Shown: one piece after another, positions 39,545-47,449 of the stretch
How the letters are laid out: each line of letters begins with the position of its first letter
Position numbering within the stretch: the stretch's first letter is position 1
Virus record (IMG/VR): IMGVR_UViG_3300042484_002457
Location: 124,001-188,000 of that record
Reading direction: 5' to 3' (one strand)
Length of the DNA stretch: 64,000 nt
The notes under the pieces: model-generated
The model's input: the letters and a program-made list of their open reading frames with translations, nothing else
The model's database searches: none
Told to the model about the DNA's origin: nothing
Program-made: the position numbers and the translations under genes

Positions 39545-39744
39545 GACTGCGGGAAATTACTGAAAACGTCAGCACTGTAGCAGGATCTTTTGCTCCAGTC
39601 GTTATGCCCATGGGCACTGTGTCAAGAAACGGCGGAGGCTTGCTTTCAGGTAAATATACAACTGATCCTACGCCTAACACGCCCAAGGAATACAAAAGGA
39701 ACAAAAATGCTCGCGGACGCTTTAAAAACTCTCCTGGCAACTGA
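39541..39744 (+). CDS. small putative internal protein
   Basis: MRLREITE start; GGAG upstream. Confidence 0.6.
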   Translation: MRLREITENVSTVAGSFAPVVMPMGTVSRNGGGLLSGKYTTDPTPNTPKEYKRNKNARGRFKNSPGN

Positions 39745-40150
39745 ATACGCATTCGTAATCAAGGCCCAGCTATTTCACTGGAATGTGGAGGGTCCAGACT
39801 TTGCTCAACTGCACAAGTTCTTTGGCAAGATCTACGACGAAGTGTACGAAAATTCTATAGATCAAACCGCAGAGTTTATCCGCATTTTAGATGACTACAC
39901 TCCTGGCAGCTTTGAACGTTTTGGTGAGCTGTCTACAATTTCTGGCCAAACCAAGATTCCGCGTGCTCGACTCATGATTGAAGAGTTGTATGCCAACAAC
40001 GATCAAATGATAGACTTACTGAACAAAACATTCCAAATTGCTGAACAAGAAAATCAGCAAGGCATCATGGACTTCCTGGCCGCTCGCATTGACGCACACG
40101 GCAAGCACGGTTGGATGTTGAGAAGTTTTTTGAAAGACGCTAGAGCATGA
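39707..40150 (+). CDS. dps: Dps/ferritin-like DNA starvation protein
   Basis: FHWNVEGPDFAQLHKFF...DQTAEFIR...HGWMLRS; start ATG 39707. Confidence 0.9.
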   Translation: MLADALKTLLATEYAFVIKAQLFHWNVEGPDFAQLHKFFGKIYDEVYENSIDQTAEFIRILDDYTPGSFERFGELSTISGQTKIPRARLMIEELYANNDQMIDLLNKTFQIAEQENQQGIMDFLAARIDAHGKHGWMLRSFLKDARA

Positions 40151-40885: not shown

Positions 40886-43591
40886 ATGTACATTACACAA
40901 CTATTACCACAACAAACGTCTAGCATTCGTAGACTAGACGAAAGTGTCCTATTAGAAGATCCAGTATACCGCAAGTTCAAGACTGTGGGTCGTTACATTG
41001 CTGAACGCCGCATGAGCGAAAAAGAAATTCTACAAGTATTTGCAGACGCCGAAGCAGGCATGACTGACAAAGCTACCGGAGCCAACCGTACTATGTTAGG
41101 CCGTGGCAAAGATACCACCATGGACTTTGCTGGCGGTGTAAAAGACGCAGTGTCTAGTGTACTCAACAGCATACAGAATTCAGTTCCTGTTGCCGCAGTA
41201 GATGTTGCTTATGACCAAGCCACTGACGCTTTGGCCAATATGGCTGGCGGACAAAAAGGCAAAGTCATGCAGGCCATCAAAGGCTATCGCAACTTGGTCA
41301 AACAGTATCCTAAAACAGCAGGCTTTGCCAAAGCAGCCTTGGTTGCTATCGCTGGTCTAGCCACAGGCGGTGCAGGGTTGCCTGCTATTGCAGGTTTGAC
41401 CTATGCACTGGATTCGGCTATCCGTGGAGATAAACTATCCAGCGTTCTTGGCAAAGGTGCTGGCGCTACTGCTGTTACTTGGGGCGGTCAACAAGTGGCC
41501 GGTGCTTTGGGCGGTGGAGATGCTGCTACTCCTGATTCAAATTCTCAAGGTCCAAATGTTGATGATAGAATTGATGCTGCTAGAGCAAGAGTTGACGCAG
41601 CCAATTCCAAATTAGGAATAGACGGGTCTGCACAGAACTACGATGTTACAGGTAATGTCAGTCAGGCTGCCGGAGTTGATACACCTTTGCCACAAGGTGC
41701 CACAGTAAGATGCCCGTTGGGATCATGCAATGGTGATGCATGGCAAGTGAAGCCTGGCGAAACTTTTAGCGATATTGCACAACAAATTGGTGTGCCACCA
41801 GAAGAGCTAGTTAAACTGAATCCTGGGCTTGCTGGACCTGGCGGCACTTATACTGTGATGAAAGGTGACCAACTGGGATTTATTGCTCAAGCGCAAGGAA
41901 CAACACCCGAAGCAATTCGCGCAGCAAATCCAGATATTAATTTTTCCAAGGCATTGCAGCAAGGACAAGAAATCAATTTACCTGCTGCTGGTACTCCTGG
42001 TCAAGGCAGTGTGTGGGCAGATTACAAGGGCGGCATGTATGGAGACAAAGCAGCCGCGCAAACAGCAGGTTCTGGCACAGGATCTGTTGGACCAACAAAT
42101 CTTGGACCAAATTTTAATCCGGACAATGTTCCTGCAGGTTGGACAATGAAACAAGCACCTAGTCCAATAGACACAACTGCTGGAACTACTCAACGTTATA
42201 TTCCACAGTCTGATGGTACTTGGATTGATGCTAGCACGGGCAAAGTTGCAGATGCTGCTAAACTACAAGCATCGCAGGACGCTGTGAGAAATGCGTTGCG
42301 CACAGGATTTAAAGAATCTATCAAGTTTAAAACACTGCCAGTTGACAAATTAATTGATCACAAACTCACTGTAATGTCTTGGGCACTAAATGAAAGTGTA
42401 GGCAAACCACAAGGTCAAAGCGTACAGCTGACCACTGCTGGTACCTACACAGTGTTTGAAAACGTTGACCGATATCGCAAGGCCGTCATGGAACTCAAAG
42501 GTGTGCCAGGCAGCACACGCCCAGCTCAATATCGACCAGACATGTCCGGCGGCGCCGGCGTGAAATCCAAGCCAGGGATTGTTGGCAAAGGCCTTAACTG
42601 GTTAGACAAAACTGCAGGCAAAGTAGGCGGAGCACTGAGCAATTTTGGACATCAGTTTACTACTAACGTCACAAAAGAAAAACTCAAGATGAACTGGCAC
42701 CAGGCCGGCAAGCCCAGTGATTCAGATCAATTGGCTGCTTGGTTAGCCAAACAAGGTGTGCCACAAGACGTTGTTACCAGTGTGTATAGCAAGATGGGTA
42801 TTCCTGTTAGTGCGCCAAGTCCAGTCCCAACACCTGAGCCTGCGCCAATGGATACTAATCCCGCACCAACACCGTCTCCAACACCTGTATCGATAAATCG
42901 TTCAGGCATTGGAAGAATAGCAGGATCAACTGAAGTTGCGTCAGGCTTGATAAATCCCAAAACTAAAAAACCATACACTTATCAAGAACTCAGAGCCATG
43001 GGCAGCGAACCAGAGACTGCACCAACTACTCCAACTACGCCAAGTACAACACCAACAGTTGCCCCAGTAGGTTACAACGCCAAGAACGTTATGAACCTGC
43101 CAGGCATGGAAAAATATGCCAAGCAGCCTGCAGCGCCGGCCAAGACAGCCAACTTTGGCGTACCCAATGCATACAGCAAAACTACTACCACAGTTAAACC
43201 CATGGCTGGGGTACCTGGTGCCAAGACTGCTACACCAGCAGCACCTGTTGCACCAGCAGCACCTGCAGCGCCTGGCGTACCAGCAGCACCTACAATGAAA
43301 ATTGGTGGCCAGGCCTTGAATCCAAAGAATCCCGCCGATAAAAAGATCATTGACAAAGTACAAGCACAGGCTGAAAAAGTAGCAGAAGCTCTTGAAATAC
43401 CTGTGTCCAAAATGCTAGACCTAGTTGAGACAAAAGAAGATGTGCGCCAGATTAAAAATTTCATTGATCAGACCTTTGTAAAATATGGTATGATAGGCGA
43501 AAGTGCATTTGTTGTTCGTAACAAATTGATTGAGCACGTGACACATGTTGGCGCACAACGCCGTAGAGAGTTTGCCCGCAAGAACAGCTGA
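40886..43591 (+). CDS. large virion-type protein with a hydrophobic segment, two LysM domains and Pro/Ala/Thr-rich linkers
   Basis: WQVKPGETFSDIAQQIGV...LNP and YTVMKGDQLGFIAQAQGTT...ANPDI; ALVAIAGLATGGAGLPAIAGL. Confidence 0.75.
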   Translation: MYITQLLPQQTSSIRRLDESVLLEDPVYRKFKTVGRYIAERRMSEKEILQVFADAEAGMTDKATGANRTMLGRGKDTTMDFAGGVKDAVSSVLNSIQNSVPVAAVDVAYDQATDALANMAGGQKGKVMQAIKGYRNLVKQYPKTAGFAKAALVAIAGLATGGAGLPAIAGLTYALDSAIRGDKLSSVLGKGAGATAVTWGGQQVAGALGGGDAATPDSNSQGPNVDDRIDAARARVDAANSKLGIDGSAQNYDVTGNVSQAAGVDTPLPQGATVRCPLGSCNGDAWQVKPGETFSDIAQQIGVPPEELVKLNPGLAGPGGTYTVMKGDQLGFIAQAQGTTPEAIRAANPDINFSKALQQGQEINLPAAGTPGQGSVWADYKGGMYGDKAAAQTAGSGTGSVGPTNLGPNFNPDNVPAGWTMKQAPSPIDTTAGTTQRYIPQSDGTWIDASTGKVADAAKLQASQDAVRNALRTGFKESIKFKTLPVDKLIDHKLTVMSWALNESVGKPQGQSVQLTTAGTYTVFENVDRYRKAVMELKGVPGSTRPAQYRPDMSGGAGVKSKPGIVGKGLNWLDKTAGKVGGALSNFGHQFTTNVTKEKLKMNWHQAGKPSDSDQLAAWLAKQGVPQDVVTSVYSKMGIPVSAPSPVPTPEPAPMDTNPAPTPSPTPVSINRSGIGRIAGSTEVASGLINPKTKKPYTYQELRAMGSEPETAPTTPTTPSTTPTVAPVGYNAKNVMNLPGMEKYAKQPAAPAKTANFGVPNAYSKTTTTVKPMAGVPGAKTATPAAPVAPAAPAAPGVPAAPTMKIGGQALNPKNPADKKIIDKVQAQAEKVAEALEIPVSKMLDLVETKEDVRQIKNFIDQTFVKYGMIGESAFVVRNKLIEHVTHVGAQRRREFARKNS

Positions 43592-43686
43592 ACACACCTT
43601 AGGACCGGTACTTGTTACCGTAAGTGTGAGGCGGCTGCTGCCTTGGAATTGAACGATTCGCTACCTAGTAAATTCCTAAAACGAGC
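43592..43686. ncRNA. candidate structured intergenic RNA
   Basis: Four compact helices visible by eye in a ~95-nt intergenic stretch. Confidence 0.45.
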
Positions 43687-43697
43687 ATATACATCCC

Positions 43698-43725
43698 GCA
43701 GCGGCTTGACCAAGGCCGCTGTTTT
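43698..43725 (+). terminator. rho-independent terminator overlapping a TTGACC...TATACT promoter
   Basis: CAGCGGC-TTGACCAAG-GCCGCTG-TTTT; TATACT at 43730. Confidence 0.65.
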
Positions 43726-43758
43726 CATTTATACTAGTACTTTACAACAGGAGGTCCT

Positions 43759-44019
43759 ATGTCGGACAAAACTTTTAACGGCGATCAAAAAATCAAACTG
43801 ATAACTATCATCAATGAGGGCATGGCAGTCATGCACGAAATTGAAACACTGCAAGGTGGCCTCAATGACACCATCAAAGCTGTGGCCGAAGAACTGGAAG
43901 TCAAGCCAGCTATTCTCAAGAAGGCAATCAAACTTGCACACAAAGCTGAATTTGGCAAAGAGAAACAAGACCACGAAACTCTAGAAACTATTCTTGAAAC
44001 AGTGGGGCGCACATTGTAA
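43759..44019 (+). CDS. T4 DsbA/GapR-like dsDNA-binding protein
   Basis: 86 aa helical; DTIKAVAEELEVKPAILKKAIKLAHK; GGAGG RBS. Confidence 0.6.
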   Translation: MSDKTFNGDQKIKLITIINEGMAVMHEIETLQGGLNDTIKAVAEELEVKPAILKKAIKLAHKAEFGKEKQDHETLETILETVGRTL

Positions 44020-44655
44020 TTAATTTTTAGAAGCAGCTCTTCTCTGGTGTGCTAGTCTCATACGTTCTTTGGTCTCCGCAGAATGCGTTTTTCCTAGCAT
44101 GCCCGACACTTTAGGTTTTTTACTGTATGTCTCTCTAAGAGACTCTTTAATTTTCTTTTTTGTTTCTTCCGATCGCATCGATTTGCTACGCGAATTTCCA
44201 ATTAGTGATTTACTAATTTTTTCCTTAGTTTCATCACTGGTTATTTGCAAGGCTCGTTTATTGCGAATTTTTTGTTTGATTTTCTCAGATAGCATTTTGC
44301 CTGTTTGAGCAAGACGAATACTATTCTTGTGTTCTTCACTAAGTGATTCGCACTTGAATCGATTTTTTCCGTGAAAACAAGATCGATTCAATAGTAAATT
44401 GCTACCCCAGTTTTCAAATATCAATTGCTGTTCAAAATCGTATGCATCATTGCCAGTATAAAACTCTGCAATAATATACCATACATAATCATCAAAGTTG
44501 TTAGAAACAATAAGGGATGATGTTTTATAATACATAAAATCTACATTAGATGGTAATGTGTTGGCTTCTCTGTAGCCGATATAAAATTCTTTTGATTCTT
44601 TATGAATGCACATATAAACATACGGCATTGCCTTCGTTGATGGATAAGTATTCAT
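44020..44655 (-). CDS. GIY-YIG-like homing endonuclease with NUMOD3 repeats
   Basis: PYVYMC...FYIGYR, repeated SEETKKKI / GKTHSAETKERM; ATG 44655 behind AAGGAG. Confidence 0.8.
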   Translation of the reverse strand: MNTYPSTKAMPYVYMCIHKESKEFYIGYREANTLPSNVDFMYYKTSSLIVSNNFDDYVWYIIAEFYTGNDAYDFEQQLIFENWGSNLLLNRSCFHGKNRFKCESLSEEHKNSIRLAQTGKMLSEKIKQKIRNKRALQITSDETKEKISKSLIGNSRSKSMRSEETKKKIKESLRETYSKKPKVSGMLGKTHSAETKERMRLAHQRRAASKN

Positions 44656-44723
44656 GCTGATTGCTCCTTTTAGCATTAGAGCCGGTGGATGCGTCCAACA
44701 TCGCGACTGGCAACTTTATTTAT
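44653..44723 (-). promoter_or_regulatory. conserved structured leader upstream of the endonuclease gene (copy B)
   Basis: Closely similar to 26191-26262. Confidence 0.75.
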
Positions 44724-44785: not shown

Positions 44786-47449
44786 ATTAGCTACGTAGAC
44801 AGTTTATTTGATCGTGAGCACGATCGCATTCATGTTGTTGAGCGCCGTGATGGTGTTCGCAAATATCAAGAATACCCGGCCAATTATGTTTTTTATTACG
44901 ACGACCCACGTGGCAAGTTCAAAAGCATTTATAGTACGCCAGTATCAAGATTCAGCACACGCAACAACAAAGAGTTTCGCAAAGAAGTTCGCATGCATTC
45001 CGGCAAGCAACTTTACGAAAGCGACATCAACCCTATCTTTAGGTGCTTGGAAGAAAACTACAAAGATGTCGATGCTCCAGAACTGCACACAGCATTTTTC
45101 GACATTGAAGTAGATTTTGATAAAGTTCGGGGTTTTAGTCCTGTTGAAGATCCATTCAATCCTATCACTGCAATTTCTGTTTATCTAGATTGGTTGGATC
45201 AGTTAATAACCTTGGCGGTGCCGCCCAAGGGCCTGAGTTGGGAAACTGCGCAAGATTTGGTCAAAGAATTTGATAATACTATTCTGTTTGATAACGAAGC
45301 AGACATGATCAAAACTTTTCTTGATCTCATTGACGATGCAGACGTACTGTCAGGTTGGAACTCGGAAGGTTATGACATTCCGTACACTGTAAACAGAACC
45401 ATACGTATTCTCAGCAAAGACGATACTCGTAAGTTTTGTTTATGGGGGCAGTTGCCCAAGAAGCGCATGTTCGAACGCTTTGGTGCTGAACAAGAAACTT
45501 ATGACTTGGTGGGCCGTGTTCACATGGACTATATGCAGTTGTACCGCAAGTACACTTATGAAGAACGGCACAGCTACAGCTTGGACGCCATTGCTGAATA
45601 CGAGCTAGGTGAACGCAAAACACAGTTTGAAGGTACACTGGATTCCTTGTATAATCAACACTTCAAGACATTTATTGAATACAACCGTCAAGATACCTTG
45701 TTGTTAAACAAGCTGGACAAGAAATTGCGATTCCTGGAACTGGCCAGCGAACTGGCACATGCCAACACTGTGCTACTACAGACCACCATGGGCGCTGTGG
45801 CAGTTACCGAACAGGCCATTATCAACGAAGCACACGAACGTGGCATGGTTGTGCCCAATCGCAAACAGCGACTGGACAGTGAAGACACACAAGCAGCTGG
45901 AGCATATGTTGCATATCCCAAAAAAGGCATGCACGAGTGGGTGGGATCAGTAGACATTAACTCACTGTATCCGTCGGCCATTCGAGCCATGAACATGGGC
46001 CCCGAGACTGTGATTGGACAGTTGCGACCCATCATGACTGACAGGTATATTGCAGACAAAATGGCCAAGAACCGTGGCAACTTTGCTGACGCCTGGGAAG
46101 GCTTGTTTGGATCGCTTGAATACACTGCTGTGATGGAACAGAATCGTGGCACTGAAATCATCATCGACTGGGAGTCAGGCCAAGAAACCAAGCACAGTGC
46201 CGCTGAAGTTTGGAACTTGATGTTTGACAGTAACCAGCCTTGGATTTTGACTGCAAACGGTACTATTCTAAGTTTTGAGAAACGAGGTATCATTCCTGGT
46301 TTGCTGGAGCGTTGGTATAGTGAACGTAAAGAAATGCAGGCCAAGAAAAAAGATGCCACTGATCCCAAAGAGATTGCGTTCTGGGACAAGCGACAACTGG
46401 TCAAAAAGATTAACTTGAACAGCTTGTATGGTGCTATTTTGAATCCAGGTTGCAGATTCTTTGACAAACGCATTGGACAGTCAACCACACTCACTGGTCG
46501 AGCAATTGCTAGACACATGGATGCTTACATCAATGAATGTGTAACTGGCAAGTACGACCACCTGGGCGAAGCAGTGATTTATGGTGACACAGACTCATGC
46601 TATTTCTCAGCCTGGCCGGTGCTACAGAAGGAAGTTGAACAAGGACGTATGGAGTGGAGCAAGGAAACTTGTATTGCACTGTATGATTCAATTGCAGACC
46701 AAGTCAACGAAAGCTTTCCTACATTCATGGAACAGGCATTTCATTGTCCCAGAGACATGGGCTCATTGATCAAGTGTGGTCGAGAAATGGTTGCAGATCG
46801 CAGTTTGTTTATCACAAAGAAACGCTATGCCGTAAACATCATTGATCTAGAAGGCAAACGACTAGATGTCAATGGCAAGATTGGCAAGACCAAGGCCACT
46901 GGCTTGGACTTGAAACGTAGTGATACACCCAAAGTTATTCAAGACTTCTTGTTGGAAATTCTAAATAGTCTGTTGGCAGGCGCTGACAAAGATACTATTG
47001 TAGAAAAAATTCGTGAGTTCAAATACAAGTTTATGGAACGCCCGGGTTGGGAAAAAGGCTCACCCAAGCGTGTGAACAACTTGACCAAGTACGCTGCTGA
47101 CGAAGCACGTGAAGGCAAAGCAAACATGCCTGGTCATGTGCGAGCAGCACTGAACTGGAACAACCTGCGTAGAATGAACTCGGACAACTACAGTATGCAG
47201 ATTGTGGATGGTATGAAAACCATTGTGTGCAAGCTCAAGAGCAATGCACTGGGCTGGACGTCAATTGGTTATCCCACAGATGAACAACGTTTGCCTGCTT
47301 GGTTTACAGAATTGCCGTTTGATAACGACCTCATGGAAGCCACTGTTGTGGACAAAAAAGTTGACAACTTGTTGGGTGTACTAGAATGGGATCTAGCCTC
47401 AGCAACCAATACTGAAAATACATTTACATCATTGTTTAGCTTTGAATGA
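44786..47449 (+). CDS. family B DNA polymerase (T4 gp43-like), probable ATT start
   Basis: Exonuclease motifs FDIEVD, GWNSEGYDIPY, YNRQD; polymerase motifs DINSLYPS, KINLNSLYG, YGDTDS; frame open 69 codons upstream of ATG 44993 to an ATT 7 nt after GGAG. Confidence 0.93.
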   Translation: MSYVDSLFDREHDRIHVVERRDGVRKYQEYPANYVFYYDDPRGKFKSIYSTPVSRFSTRNNKEFRKEVRMHSGKQLYESDINPIFRCLEENYKDVDAPELHTAFFDIEVDFDKVRGFSPVEDPFNPITAISVYLDWLDQLITLAVPPKGLSWETAQDLVKEFDNTILFDNEADMIKTFLDLIDDADVLSGWNSEGYDIPYTVNRTIRILSKDDTRKFCLWGQLPKKRMFERFGAEQETYDLVGRVHMDYMQLYRKYTYEERHSYSLDAIAEYELGERKTQFEGTLDSLYNQHFKTFIEYNRQDTLLLNKLDKKLRFLELASELAHANTVLLQTTMGAVAVTEQAIINEAHERGMVVPNRKQRLDSEDTQAAGAYVAYPKKGMHEWVGSVDINSLYPSAIRAMNMGPETVIGQLRPIMTDRYIADKMAKNRGNFADAWEGLFGSLEYTAVMEQNRGTEIIIDWESGQETKHSAAEVWNLMFDSNQPWILTANGTILSFEKRGIIPGLLERWYSERKEMQAKKKDATDPKEIAFWDKRQLVKKINLNSLYGAILNPGCRFFDKRIGQSTTLTGRAIARHMDAYINECVTGKYDHLGEAVIYGDTDSCYFSAWPVLQKEVEQGRMEWSKETCIALYDSIADQVNESFPTFMEQAFHCPRDMGSLIKCGREMVADRSLFITKKRYAVNIIDLEGKRLDVNGKIGKTKATGLDLKRSDTPKVIQDFLLEILNSLLAGADKDTIVEKIREFKYKFMERPGWEKGSPKRVNNLTKYAADEAREGKANMPGHVRAALNWNNLRRMNSDNYSMQIVDGMKTIVCKLKSNALGWTSIGYPTDEQRLPAWFTELPFDNDLMEATVVDKKVDNLLGVLEWDLASATNTENTFTSLFSFE

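What the first reader, a model, noticed from the sequence alone, without database searches (positions are those of the whole stretch)
43592..43686. Compact multi-helix intergenic RNA candidate after the LysM gene
Seen: CACAC(C)TTA/TAAGTGTG enclosing CGGTA/TACCG, then AGGCGG/CTGCCT, then GGAATT/AATTCC with a 20-nt loop whose TTCG could pair with the downstream CGAG (pseudoknot). A separate terminator follows at 43698. The reverse strand contains CCGGTCCTAAG, loosely reminiscent of twister-type cores, but I cannot fit a known ribozyme. Inference: an sRNA, self-cleaving RNA or processing element.
Basis: partly seen in the sequence, partly recalled or inferred. Interest (0 to 1): 0.6.

Follow-up and report, generated by a model that had tools for sequence, protein, structure and literature searches.

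The report
Phage RNA antisense to 23S rRNA
The flagged intergenic stretch is a real, strongly conserved, pseudoknotted RNA of uncultivated lake-water jumbo phages. Its invariant loops are exact antisense copies of the universally conserved helix 69/70 region of bacterial 23S ribosomal RNA, which points to a phage RNA that pairs with the host's large ribosomal subunit.

Summary
A single-sequence fold is not significant (z -1.7), but a covariance model finds the element once in this 209-kb phage contig and in more than 150 related viral contigs, always on the gene strand. In 100 sequences 90.5% of cells pair (63.5% shuffled) and 17 of 21 pairs show compensatory changes. No Rfam family matches, and the twister resemblance lies on the wrong strand. 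The architecture is P1 (loop CCUUAGGACC, with optional hairpin P1a), P2, P3 (loop AUUCGCUAC) and a pseudoknot. A second class replaces P2 or the canonical tail pairing with an intrinsic terminator. The main finding is that CUUAGGACC and UUCGCUAC are reverse complements of 23S rRNA nt 1921-1929 and 1930-1937, one contiguous 17-mer. P1a loops complement the helix 69 loop (1910-1916). The target is identical across four bacterial phyla. Best reading (about 0.5): the RNA lies at the 3' end of the upstream mRNA, right after its stop codon, and displays rRNA-antisense loops that bind exposed helix 69/70 of free or nascent 50S. Binding and its effect are untested, and no RNA-seq exists for this phage.

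The parts
40886..43591 (+). Upstream 901-aa ORF (weak LysM-type hits at aa 283-371). Its TGA stop (43589-43591) lies 1 nt before P1.
   Evidence: Homologous upstream ORFs occur in only about 47 of 179 motif loci; elsewhere more than 40 unrelated ORF families end here.
43593..43597 (+). P1 5' strand (CACAC). It pairs with 43624-43628.
   Evidence: All four modelled P1 pairs show changes on both sides (for example ACUC/GAGU, ACAC/GUGU, CACC/GGUG).
43597..43607 (+). Block A, CCUUAGGACCG, displayed in the P1 loop. It is antisense to 23S rRNA nt 1920-1930; the core CUUAGGACC matches 1921-1929.
   Evidence: Near-invariant in the unbiased p86-derived set: 44 of 45 distinct rows carry CTTAGG[A/G]C and L029 lacks it. 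The reverse complement occurs once in E. coli 23S, at 1920/1921.
43606..43620 (+). P1a, an optional inserted hairpin (CGGUA / UACCG, loop CUUGU). GUUAC at 43614-43618 is complementary to the helix 69 loop, 23S 1910-1914.
   Evidence: Present in 'long' forms and absent in 'short' forms. 80 of 82 long forms have at least 5 nt of Watson-Crick complementarity to 23S 1900-1921, mostly GUAAC(UA), against 21% of shuffles.
43624..43628 (+). P1 3' strand (GUGUG).
43629..43643 (+). P2: a 4-bp stem (43629-43632 / 43640-43643) with the 7-nt loop GGCUGCU (43633-43639).
   Evidence: Stem pairs are 99.2% paired with G-C, C-G, A-U and G-U interchange. The loop GGCUKCUG is near-invariant in class I.
43634..43638 (+). 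Pseudoknot 5' strand (GCUGC, with G43637 bulged). It pairs with GAGC at 43683-43686.
   Evidence: Loop GGGU always occurs with tail GACC (8 sequences). Loop GCUAC occurs with GUAGC or GUGGC, and GCCAC with GUGGC. Class II-b variants carry quite different complementary pairs such as CCCCC:GGGGG.
43645..43676 (+). P3: outer stem 43645-43650 / 43671-43676, internal loop, closing pair G43655-C43665, and the invariant 9-nt loop AUUCGCUAC (43656-43664).
   Evidence: Outer pairs covary. The closing pair is G-C 74, A-U 24, C-G 1, with none unpaired.
43657..43665 (+). Block B, UUCGCUAC(C). It is antisense to 23S rRNA nt 1930-1937 (1929-1937 with the closing C) and abuts the target of block A.
43677..43686 (+). 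Tail: the A-rich linker UAAAAC, then GAGC, the 3' strand of the pseudoknot.
43698..43732 (+). Separate intrinsic terminator (10-bp stem plus T-run). This feature is not typical of the family.
   Evidence: Only 4 of 124 distinct class I copies have a terminator-like hairpin within 110 nt of the tail; three lie close behind it (window, L118, L197) and one weak match is in L134.
43706..43735 (+). Sigma-70-like promoter (TTGACC-18-TATACT) for the next gene, partly inside the terminator.
   Evidence: Relatives have TTGACA-17-TATAAT at the same place.
43759..44019 (+). 86-aa gene 'p86' (phrog_12534 / phrog_639), the conserved downstream landmark. A DNA polymerase gene follows at 44993-47449.
   Evidence: The p86-to-DNA-polymerase order is shared with phages Phosso, SCTP-2 and Atu_ph07, and one record annotates the homologue as DsbA-like.

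Best explanation
This is a previously undescribed structured RNA family of uncultivated freshwater jumbo phages, present once per genome. It is transcribed as the 3' end of whatever gene lies upstream and starts within a few nucleotides of that gene's stop codon. It folds into P1 (+/- P1a), P2 and P3, locked by an H-type pseudoknot between the P2 loop and the 3' tail. This variable, covarying scaffold holds out invariant single-stranded loops. Those loops are exact antisense copies of neighbouring pieces of the universally conserved 23S rRNA domain IV: the P1a loop matches the helix 69 loop (1910-1916), CUUAGGACC matches 1921-1929, and UUCGCUAC matches 1930-1937. I propose that the RNA base-pairs with this region when it is exposed, in free 50S subunits (for example the one released at the adjacent stop codon) or in nascent 23S rRNA. 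Pairing would start with a hairpin-hairpin kiss at helix 69. It would hold or block the element that forms intersubunit bridge B2a. Shown here: the structure, conservation, strand, genomic position, and the exact, contiguous complementarity to a universal target. Inferred: that the RNA binds rRNA, and what that binding does (50S capture, anti-association, interference with 50S assembly, or protection of the site).
For: Conservation and structure: the covariance model finds one copy in the window at 45.7 bits, E 9e-12, and one in the 209-kb contig. It finds a copy in 63 of 80 p86-anchored loci, one of them cut at the contig end, and in 100 of 100 selected loci. The motif is 75-93% identical where the upstream protein's C-terminus is 36-65% identical. 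Covariation is given and the strand evidence. rRNA complementarity: the 18-mer CGGTCCTAAGGTAGCGAA lies at 23S 1920-1937 of E. coli rrlH. The reverse complements of the two invariant cores map to 1921-1929 and 1930-1937, abutting, and nowhere else in 23S, 16S or 5S. In 2,000,000 random 10-mer plus 8-mer pairs only 10 matched rRNA within 12 nt of each other. P1a loops complement the helix 69 loop in 80 of 82 long forms against 21% of shuffles, and block A plus P1a is collinear with antisense 23S 1909-1931. The 28-nt target is identical in Bradyrhizobium, Flavobacterium, Synechococcus and Collinsella genomes. That explains why the loops stay invariant across phages whose p86 proteins are only 44-50% identical. 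The minimal class II-a copies keep only these loops plus a terminator, so the loops are the essential part. A published table lists a 13-mer PNA directed at helix 69 of 23S rRNA and tested in E. coli K12, so this helix has been used as an antisense target (PMC12916000). A same-strand ORF stops 4-15 nt before block A in 66 of 101 non-redundant contexts, although the ORFs belong to more than 40 unrelated families.
Against: There is no expression or binding data: no RNA run holds this phage. In mature 50S most of nt 1920-1937 is base-paired or packed (established ribosome structure), so invasion may need free or nascent rRNA. Pairing 8-11 nt inside closed loops needs partial opening of P1 and P3. 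The 5' A of the P3 loop is invariant yet faces A1938, a mismatch. In some class II-b copies block A is paired in cis with a CCUAAGG segment, and in the window it is partly paired (UUA/UAA). The two arms are in 'A then B' order, not the order of a simple interrupted antisense, so both helices cannot stack without the scaffold spanning them. The complementarity could be a relic of an ancestral inverted rDNA fragment exapted for another job. A single mRNA 3' end is few against tens of thousands of ribosomes. Much of the large data set was gathered with a pattern that required both blocks, so the invariance claim rests on the smaller p86-anchored set.
Confidence: 0.5

Rival explanations
1. It is a protein- or RNA polymerase-binding element at the 3' end of an operon. 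It would act as a regulated terminator, antiterminator, retroregulator or mRNA stabiliser. The conserved loops would be a bipartite binding site, and the rRNA complementarity would be a relic or coincidence.
For: The element always sits between the stop codon of one gene and the promoter of the next. All of the roughly 20 class II copies are intrinsic terminators: either the AUUCGCUAC hairpin itself or the pseudoknot helix is followed by a U-run. The window copy is followed by its own terminator. The P3 hairpin with its invariant loop recalls protein-bound operators such as boxB and the T4 gene 43 operator (from established knowledge).
Against: Only 4 of 124 class I copies have a terminator-like hairpin after them. 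There is one copy per genome, whereas general terminator elements would recur. No partner protein gene is consistently adjacent: upstream genes are unrelated and 0-11 kb of variable genes can separate the element from p86. This rival does not explain why two separate loops match one contiguous 17-mer of rRNA (about 5e-6 by chance).
Confidence: 0.25
2. It is a new class of self-cleaving ribozyme, or a site for host RNases, that cuts the polycistronic transcript between genes.
For: About 30 invariant nucleotides sit in loops and junctions of a small pseudoknotted fold, which is typical of small ribozymes. The element lies between co-oriented phage genes, as many hammerhead, twister, pistol and hatchet examples do (from established knowledge). 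No known family matches, so it would be a new class.
Against: There is no match to any ribozyme model. The minimal class II-a form lacks P2 and the pseudoknot, so the 'core' would be only two loops. The invariant nucleotides are fully accounted for as antisense to rRNA. There are no read data to show a cleavage site.
Confidence: 0.1
3. It is a riboswitch or other ligand-sensing RNA whose pseudoknot controls a terminator or downstream expression.
For: It has a pseudoknotted, aptamer-like fold with conserved junction nucleotides. Class II copies end in a terminator, like an expression platform. The window copy has a terminator 11 nt downstream, and its 5' arm could compete for the P2 loop.
Against: The promoter of the downstream gene lies after the element, so the element is not in that gene's leader. 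Flanking genes are unrelated, so there is no common regulated function. Most class I copies have no expression platform.
Confidence: 0.05
4. It is a DNA-level element: a single-stranded-DNA structure at a replication origin, or a homing-endonuclease target related to the I-CeuI rDNA site.
For: It is a single copy next to replication genes (p86, DNA polymerase). The region is a hot spot of variable insertions, and a homing endonuclease gene lies at 44020-44676. Block A plus P1a resembles one half of the rDNA site cut by I-CeuI.
Against: G.U pairs outnumber A.C 101 to 29 and all lie on the transcribed strand. There is no GC-skew turn at the site. The two rDNA-like halves are separated and permuted, so no intact endonuclease site exists. 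The inserted genes next to the motif are mostly not endonucleases.
Confidence: 0.04

Closest known systems
Antisense RNAs that start pairing by hairpin-loop kissing (ColE1 RNA I/RNA II, R1 CopA/CopT)
   Same: A structured RNA displays short complementary sequences in loops. P1a is the antisense image of the helix 69 hairpin, so the two hairpins could kiss through their loops and then extend pairing into the flanking 17 nt.
   Different: The proposed target is a ribosomal RNA, not a cognate mRNA or primer transcribed from the opposite strand. The RNA is trans-encoded in a phage, and its complementary arms are split over three loops of a pseudoknotted scaffold.
Group II intron EBS2/EBS1 pairing with IBS2/IBS1, and T-box leaders binding tRNA at two sites
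   Same: Two separate loops of one folded RNA read adjacent (group II) or distant (T-box) parts of one target. They are in the same 5'-to-3' order as here: the upstream arm binds the target's 5' part and the downstream arm its 3' part.
   Different: There is no intron core (domain V and the rest), no reverse transcriptase and no splice sites. The RNA is about 75-100 nt. It has none of the T-box conserved sequences and no tRNA target, and Rfam finds neither family.
Calicivirus TURBS (termination upstream ribosome-binding site)
   Same: It is a viral mRNA element placed next to a stop codon that is complementary to rRNA and thought to tether the post-termination ribosome.
   Different: TURBS pairs with 18S rRNA of the small subunit, lies upstream of the stop and restart site, and serves reinitiation on an overlapping ORF. 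Here the target is 23S rRNA, the element lies downstream of the stop, and the next gene has its own promoter.
Twister ribozyme
   Same: It is a small pseudoknotted RNA, and a GGUCCUAAG-like string on the minus strand loosely recalls the twister loop.
   Different: The resemblance is on the wrong strand. There is no match to twister, twister-sister, pistol, hatchet, hammerhead or HDV models. The string is explained as the sense sequence of 23S 1921-1929.
Synthetic antisense directed at helix 69 (13-mer PNA against E. coli 23S H69, Kulik et al. 2017, as listed in PMC12916000)
   Same: It targets the same helix by Watson-Crick pairing.
   Different: It is man-made, short and unstructured. I know of no natural counterpart and found none in the paper searches.

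Membership tests
Any Rfam 15 family (including twister, twister-sister, pistol, hatchet, hammerhead, HDV-like, riboswitches, T-box, group II domains) | Score at or above the family's gathering threshold with its covariance model | tested here: not met
   There were 0 hits in the whole window at gathering thresholds. At E<=10 in 43400-43900 there were only three chance-level hits at 14-15 bits (snoZ30a, mir-1976, flavivirus xrRNA), against gathering scores of 50-80.
Twister ribozyme | The functional strand carries the conserved core, with P1-P2-P4 and two pseudoknots | tested here: not met
   The resemblance is on the minus strand. Paired columns show 101 G.U against 29 A.C, so the plus strand is the folded one. 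The helices found do not have the twister arrangement.
Self-cleaving ribozyme (any class) | Site-specific self-scission | not testable with these tools
   No RNA reads exist for this phage, and a biochemical assay is needed.
Conserved structured RNA (general criterion) | Base pairs maintained by compensatory substitutions beyond what shuffled and slid controls give | tested here: met
   90.5% of cells are paired against 63.5% in shuffles and 30-46% when slid. There are 563 doubly changed cells against 201, and 0 of 500 shuffles reach the observed values. Relatedness of the sequences inflates such counts, but several pair types occur at nearly every position.
H-type pseudoknot (P2 loop x 3' tail) | Loop nucleotides pair with a downstream single strand, supported by covariation | tested here: met
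   Pair 58-115 is C-G in 91 sequences and G-C in 8, with none unpaired. Variants GCUAC:GUAGC, GCCAC:GUGGC, CCCCC:GGGGG, CCUACA:UGUAGG, GCCCCAU:AUGGGGC and GAACCC:GGGUUC were read directly from the sequences.
   No pair changes on both sides, and 8 sequences are unpaired at 84-115 where the alternative pseudoknot is compensated.
Intrinsic (Rho-independent) terminator | A G+C-rich hairpin directly followed by a U-run | tested here: inconclusive
   The criterion is met by all class II copies, where the element itself ends in a U-run. It is not met by class I: the element has no U-run, and only 4 of 124 copies have a separate terminator-like hairpin behind it, the window among them.
rRNA-directed antisense RNA (proposed) | Extended, exact complementarity of the conserved single-stranded parts to a conserved rRNA site | tested here: met
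   CUUAGGACC matches 23S 1921-1929 and UUCGCUAC matches 1930-1937, each unique in E. coli rRNAs. P1a loops match 1910-1916. The target is identical in four phyla. Chance is about 5e-6.
rRNA-directed antisense RNA (proposed) | Physical pairing with 23S rRNA or 50S, and a functional consequence | not testable with these tools
   This needs binding, probing or ligation experiments. There are no transcriptome data.
IS110-type bridge RNA, TnpB/IscB guide RNA, or group II intron | An adjacent recombinase, nuclease or reverse transcriptase gene, with a guide at the element's boundary | tested here: not met
   Flanking genes are unrelated and variable: LysM protein, Dps-like protein, ribonucleotide reductase, radical SAM proteins and unknowns. 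Both arms pair to the same target strand.

The most novel reading that the evidence does not exclude
Jumbo phages of lakes encode a dedicated 'anti-helix-69' RNA. It would be a natural, structured antisense RNA that captures or blocks the host's 50S subunit by pairing with 23S rRNA nt 1910-1937, possibly seizing the subunit released at the stop codon just upstream. The purpose would be to re-programme, sequester or shield ribosomes during infection. It would be the first natural RNA known to target the intersubunit-bridge helix of the large subunit by Watson-Crick pairing.
Probability: 0.4. Interest if true: 0.92.

Novelty: categorically new. Interest (0 to 1): 0.85.

Why it matters
If the pairing is real, it shows a new way for a virus to take hold of the bacterial ribosome: through an RNA aimed at one of the most conserved and functionally central pieces of 23S rRNA (bridge B2a, with contacts to tRNA, release factors and the recycling factor), and not through a protein. 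It would be a natural precedent for antisense antibacterials aimed at helix 69. It would also fit, at the RNA level, the picture of huge phages carrying translation genes. Even if the rRNA link proves to be a relic, the family is a well-supported new structured RNA. It has more than 140 distinct sequences, a covariation-proven pseudoknot and two architectural classes, and it belongs to a widespread group of uncultivated phages. A consensus, a covariance model and clear mutational tests are already in hand.

Tried and rejected
- **Rfam.** Searches at gathering thresholds and at permissive thresholds gave nothing.
- **tRNA/tmRNA scan.** None found in the window.
- **BLASTN to cultured phages.** Only an unrelated 66-nt hit.
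- **Cultured distant relatives.** Phosso, SCTP-2 and Atu_ph07 share the p86-to-polymerase order but carry no motif by model or by pattern.
- **First related-loci run with the upstream C-terminus.** It failed on a frame error; I used tblastn in scripts instead.
- **MAFFT alignment of all forms.** It misaligned short and long forms. I built the model from the short forms only and realigned everything to it.
- **Scan of bacterial genomes with the two-block pattern.** It gave 82 hits, but I estimate about 1000 are expected by chance for that pattern, and nearly all lack any stem. The only real copies are in five metagenome-bin contigs (L217, L242, L271, L275, L278), which are probably phage DNA.
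- **Promoter upstream of the motif.** No conserved promoter appears in 104 non-redundant upstream sequences, so a free-standing sRNA gene is unlikely.
- **Replication origin.** There is no GC-skew turn.
- **Leader of the downstream ORF.** A promoter-like NATAAATA or TTGACA/TATAAT lies between the motif and the next gene.
- **Direct pairing between the P1 loop and the P3 loop.** At most 3 bp are possible, by inspection.
- **Sequencing runs.** All 24 are lake-water DNA runs and none is RNA.
- **P2 loop against rRNA.** It is antisense to 16S 519-526 and wobble-complementary to 23S 1902-1911. These 8-10-mers are within chance. Natural variants break them while keeping the pseudoknot, so I do not rely on them.
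- **Whole-motif local alignment to 23S.** The score of 32 is not above shuffles (mean 27.8, maximum 37). The significance rests on the invariant blocks and their adjacency, not on overall similarity.

Full report
**Setting.** The window is bases 124001-188000 of a 209.5-kb IMG/VR viral contig, estimated 58% complete. It comes from lake water: 24 DNA runs from lake metagenomes hold it and no RNA run does. The finding lies between two genes. Upstream is the TGA stop (43589-43591) of a 901-aa ORF with weak LysM-type matches. Downstream are an intrinsic terminator (43698-43722), a sigma-70-like promoter, and an 86-aa gene at 43759-44019, here called p86. A minus-strand homing-endonuclease gene and a DNA polymerase gene follow. 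The p86-to-polymerase order is shared with the cultured jumbo phages Phosso, SCTP-2 and Atu_ph07.

On this sequence alone they are not more stable than chance: z is -1.72 on the plus strand and -0.24 on the minus strand. Rfam gives nothing. The case therefore rests on homologues.

p86 has at least 592 relatives in IMG/VR. In the 80 fetched loci the stretch upstream of p86 showed a shared motif. It had 75-93% nucleotide identity where the C-terminus of the upstream protein was only 36-65% identical.

A covariance model built from 21 short-form copies gave the following results:
- one copy in the window, 43590-43690 on the plus strand, at 45.7 bits and E 9e-12;
- one copy in the whole contig;
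- one copy per locus in 63 of the 80 loci, one of them cut at the contig end, always on the p86 strand.

Some of the remaining loci carry the motif further upstream. For example, the contig of L030 has it 4.8 kb away, seen as L112. A pattern scan with the two invariant blocks added 119 further viral loci, giving 146 distinct copies in all.

**Architecture.** The parts, in window coordinates:
- P1 (43593-43597 with 43624-43628) closes a loop that holds the invariant CCUUAGGACC.
- In 'long' forms such as the window, that loop also holds an inserted hairpin, P1a (43606-43620).
- P2 is a 4-bp stem (43629-43632 with 43640-43643) with the 7-nt loop GGCUKCU.
- P3 has a variable outer stem (43645-43650 with 43671-43676) and a closing pair (43655 with 43665) around the invariant 9-nt loop AUUCGCUAC.
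- An A-rich linker then leads to GAGC (43683-43686).

On 100 sequences, 90.5% of cells pair, against 63.5% in shuffles and 30-46% with slid partners. Changes on both sides occur at 17 of 21 pairs, and the covariation score is 0.64 against 0.19. The P3 closing pair is G-C in 74 sequences, A-U in 24 and C-G in 1, and is never broken. G.U outnumbers A.C 101 to 29 at paired columns, which fixes the plus strand as the folded one.

**The pseudoknot.** It is broken in eight sequences whose tail reads GACC. In exactly those eight the P2 loop reads GGGU instead of GGCU, which restores a pair with the tail (C-G 91, G-C 8, none unpaired).

Other matched variants, read directly from the sequences, are:
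- loop GCUAC with tail GUAGC or GUGGC, and loop GCCAC with tail GUGGC;
- in class II-b copies, wholly different complementary pairs: CCCCC:GGGGG, CCUACA:UGUAGG, GCCCU:AGGGC, UCUCCCUG:CAGGGAGA, GCCCCAU:AUGGGGC and GAACCC:GGGUUC.

The tail therefore pairs with the P2 loop, forming an H-type pseudoknot that spans P3.

**Two classes.** About 20 distinct copies form class II. They keep CUUAGGACC, P1/P1a and the AUUCGCUAC loop. Either they lack P2 and the tail, so that the P3 hairpin is followed directly by a U-run (II-a), or they keep P2 and a pseudoknot of different sequence followed by a U-run (II-b). All of these are intrinsic terminators. Class I copies are not: only 4 of 124 have a terminator-like hairpin behind them, the window among them. 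The minimal II-a form shows that the two invariant loops, together with P1a, are the essential part. P2 and the pseudoknot are scaffold.

**Genomic context.** The element is not tied to either neighbour.
- Upstream ORFs fall into more than 40 unrelated families. They include the LysM protein, a Dps-like protein and ribonucleotide reductase.
- Between the element and p86 there can be 0 to 11 kb of variable genes, such as radical SAM proteins and unknowns.
- In 66 of 101 non-redundant contexts, a same-strand ORF of at least 60 codons stops 4-15 nt before CTTAGG.
- No conserved promoter precedes the element.
- Directly after the tail comes a promoter for the next gene. It is either TTGACA-17-TATAAT or a T4-late-like NATAAATA, a motif that is frequent in this genome.

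The RNA is thus the 3' end of the upstream message. It occurs once per genome, inside a hypervariable stretch.

**The key finding.** The invariant loops are antisense to 23S rRNA. E. coli rrlH carries CGGTCCTAAGGTAGCGAA at nt 1920-1937. The reverse complement of CUUAGGACC is nt 1921-1929 and that of UUCGCUAC is nt 1930-1937. These two segments abut, each is unique in 23S, 16S and 5S, and there are no sense copies.

P1a loops are complementary to GUAAC(UA), nt 1910-1916, which is the loop of helix 69. This holds in 80 of 82 long forms against 21% of shuffles. Block A plus P1a is collinear with antisense 23S 1909-1931, so P1a is the mirror image of the helix 69 hairpin.

In a Monte Carlo test, only 10 of 2,000,000 random 10-mer plus 8-mer pairs both matched rRNA within 12 nt of each other. 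The 28-nt target is identical in an alphaproteobacterium, a Flavobacterium, a Synechococcus and an actinobacterium. It is also the I-CeuI site widely used in cloning. A universal target explains why the loops are frozen while every stem drifts.

**How it most likely works.** The scaffold displays three antisense loops that pair with helix 69 and the adjoining strand when these are exposed. That would be in free 50S subunits, perhaps the one released at the adjacent stop codon, or in nascent 23S rRNA. Pairing would begin with a loop-loop kiss at helix 69. From established ribosome knowledge, helix 69 forms bridge B2a and contacts tRNAs, release factors and the recycling factor. A published table lists a 13-mer PNA directed at this helix and tested in E. 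coli (PMC12916000). The arm order (the upstream arm binds the target's 5' part) matches group II EBS2/EBS1 or T-box recognition, not a simple interrupted antisense.

What is shown is the structure, conservation, strand, position and complementarity. What is inferred is the binding and its consequence, which could be capture, anti-association, an assembly block or protection. I put this reading at about 0.5.

**Caveats.**
- There are no RNA data.
- The target is largely structured in mature 50S.
- Pairing of 8-11 nt inside closed loops needs partial unfolding.
- The invariant A at the 5' end of the P3 loop faces A1938, a mismatch.
- Block A is paired in cis in some copies.
- The complementarity might be a relic of a captured inverted rDNA fragment.
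- Much of the large data set was gathered with a pattern that required both blocks, so the invariance claim rests on the smaller p86-anchored set.

**Rivals.** These are a factor-binding terminator or retroregulator (0.25), a new self-cleaving ribozyme (0.10), a riboswitch (0.05) and a DNA-level element (0.04). The evidence for and against each is given in the Rival explanations section.

**Comparison with the known.** No Rfam family matches, and the paper searches found no phage RNA complementary to 23S rRNA. The nearest analogies are functional ones: kissing antisense RNAs, two-arm recognition in group II introns and T-boxes, the calicivirus TURBS, and synthetic anti-H69 PNA. The element belongs to none of these families.

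**Verdict.** This is a real, new and widespread structured RNA. The proposal that it acts on rRNA is striking and directly testable.

Noticed in passing
window 43698-43758; relatives e.g. L004:2410-2461: In many relatives the p86 promoter (TTGACA-17-TATAAT) sits inside an inverted repeat, TCTCCTAAA...TTTAGGAGA. In read-through transcripts this repeat would sequester the p86 ribosome-binding site, while transcripts starting at the promoter would leave it free, as in the T4 strategy. The window instead has a terminator hairpin with the -35 box in its loop.
   Followed up: partly
G000-wide; in the window e.g. 26260 (+), 39216 (-), 44724 (-), 4201 (-), 11600 (+): The T4-late-promoter-like motif NATAAATA occurs 29 times in the 209-kb contig, often only 4-8 nt before an ATG. 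This suggests near-leaderless late mRNAs. In relatives the RNA's tail GAGC is often followed directly by ATAAATAC and then an ORF with no Shine-Dalgarno sequence.
   Followed up: partly
window 44724 (-) and 26263 (-); G000 53105, 46758, 21262 (-): Five paralogous stretches of about 35 nt (GTGTAGTTCGCG...CCAACTAC-like) follow NATAAATA on the minus strand. One lies just upstream of the homing-endonuclease ORF at 44020-44676. They are probably the shared 5' ends of a family of free-standing endonuclease genes.
   Followed up: no
window 43633-43640: The P2 loop GGCUGCUG is the exact antisense of 16S rRNA nt 519-526 (the 530-loop region), and GCGGCUGCUG can wobble-pair with 23S 1902-1911. Both are within chance for 8-10-mers. 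Natural variants (K=U, GGGU) break them while keeping the pseudoknot. It is curious that all three conserved loops match rRNA in antisense.
   Followed up: partly
L271, L278 (Haliscomenobacter sp. MAG EUL_031 contigs of 39 kb and 183 kb); L242, L275, L217: The only true motif copies in 'bacterial' genomes lie in metagenome-bin contigs. Two different copies sit in one Haliscomenobacter bin. This is either a host hint or mis-binned phage DNA. The sigma-70 promoters and Shine-Dalgarno site of p86 argue against a Bacteroidota host.
   Followed up: no
region between the motif and p86 in relatives (e.g. L008:1858-2958, L055:1907-2962, L083:3346-5859): The stretch flanking the RNA is a hot spot for variable cargo. 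ORFs of about 330-390 aa from several unrelated families (radical SAM-like proteins and unknowns) start 10-20 nt after the tail, and up to 11 kb is inserted in some phages.
   Followed up: partly
window 43200-43300: The 901-aa upstream protein has an Ala/Pro-rich low-complexity linker (PAAP-type repeats) before a conserved C-terminal domain of about 100 aa. This linker gave the only BLASTN hit to a cultured phage, Yersinia fEV-1.
   Followed up: no
window 39590-40150: A Dps-like (ferritin-fold, DNA-protecting) protein gene lies two genes upstream. A homologue lies directly upstream of the motif in L090, L087 and L190.
   Followed up: no
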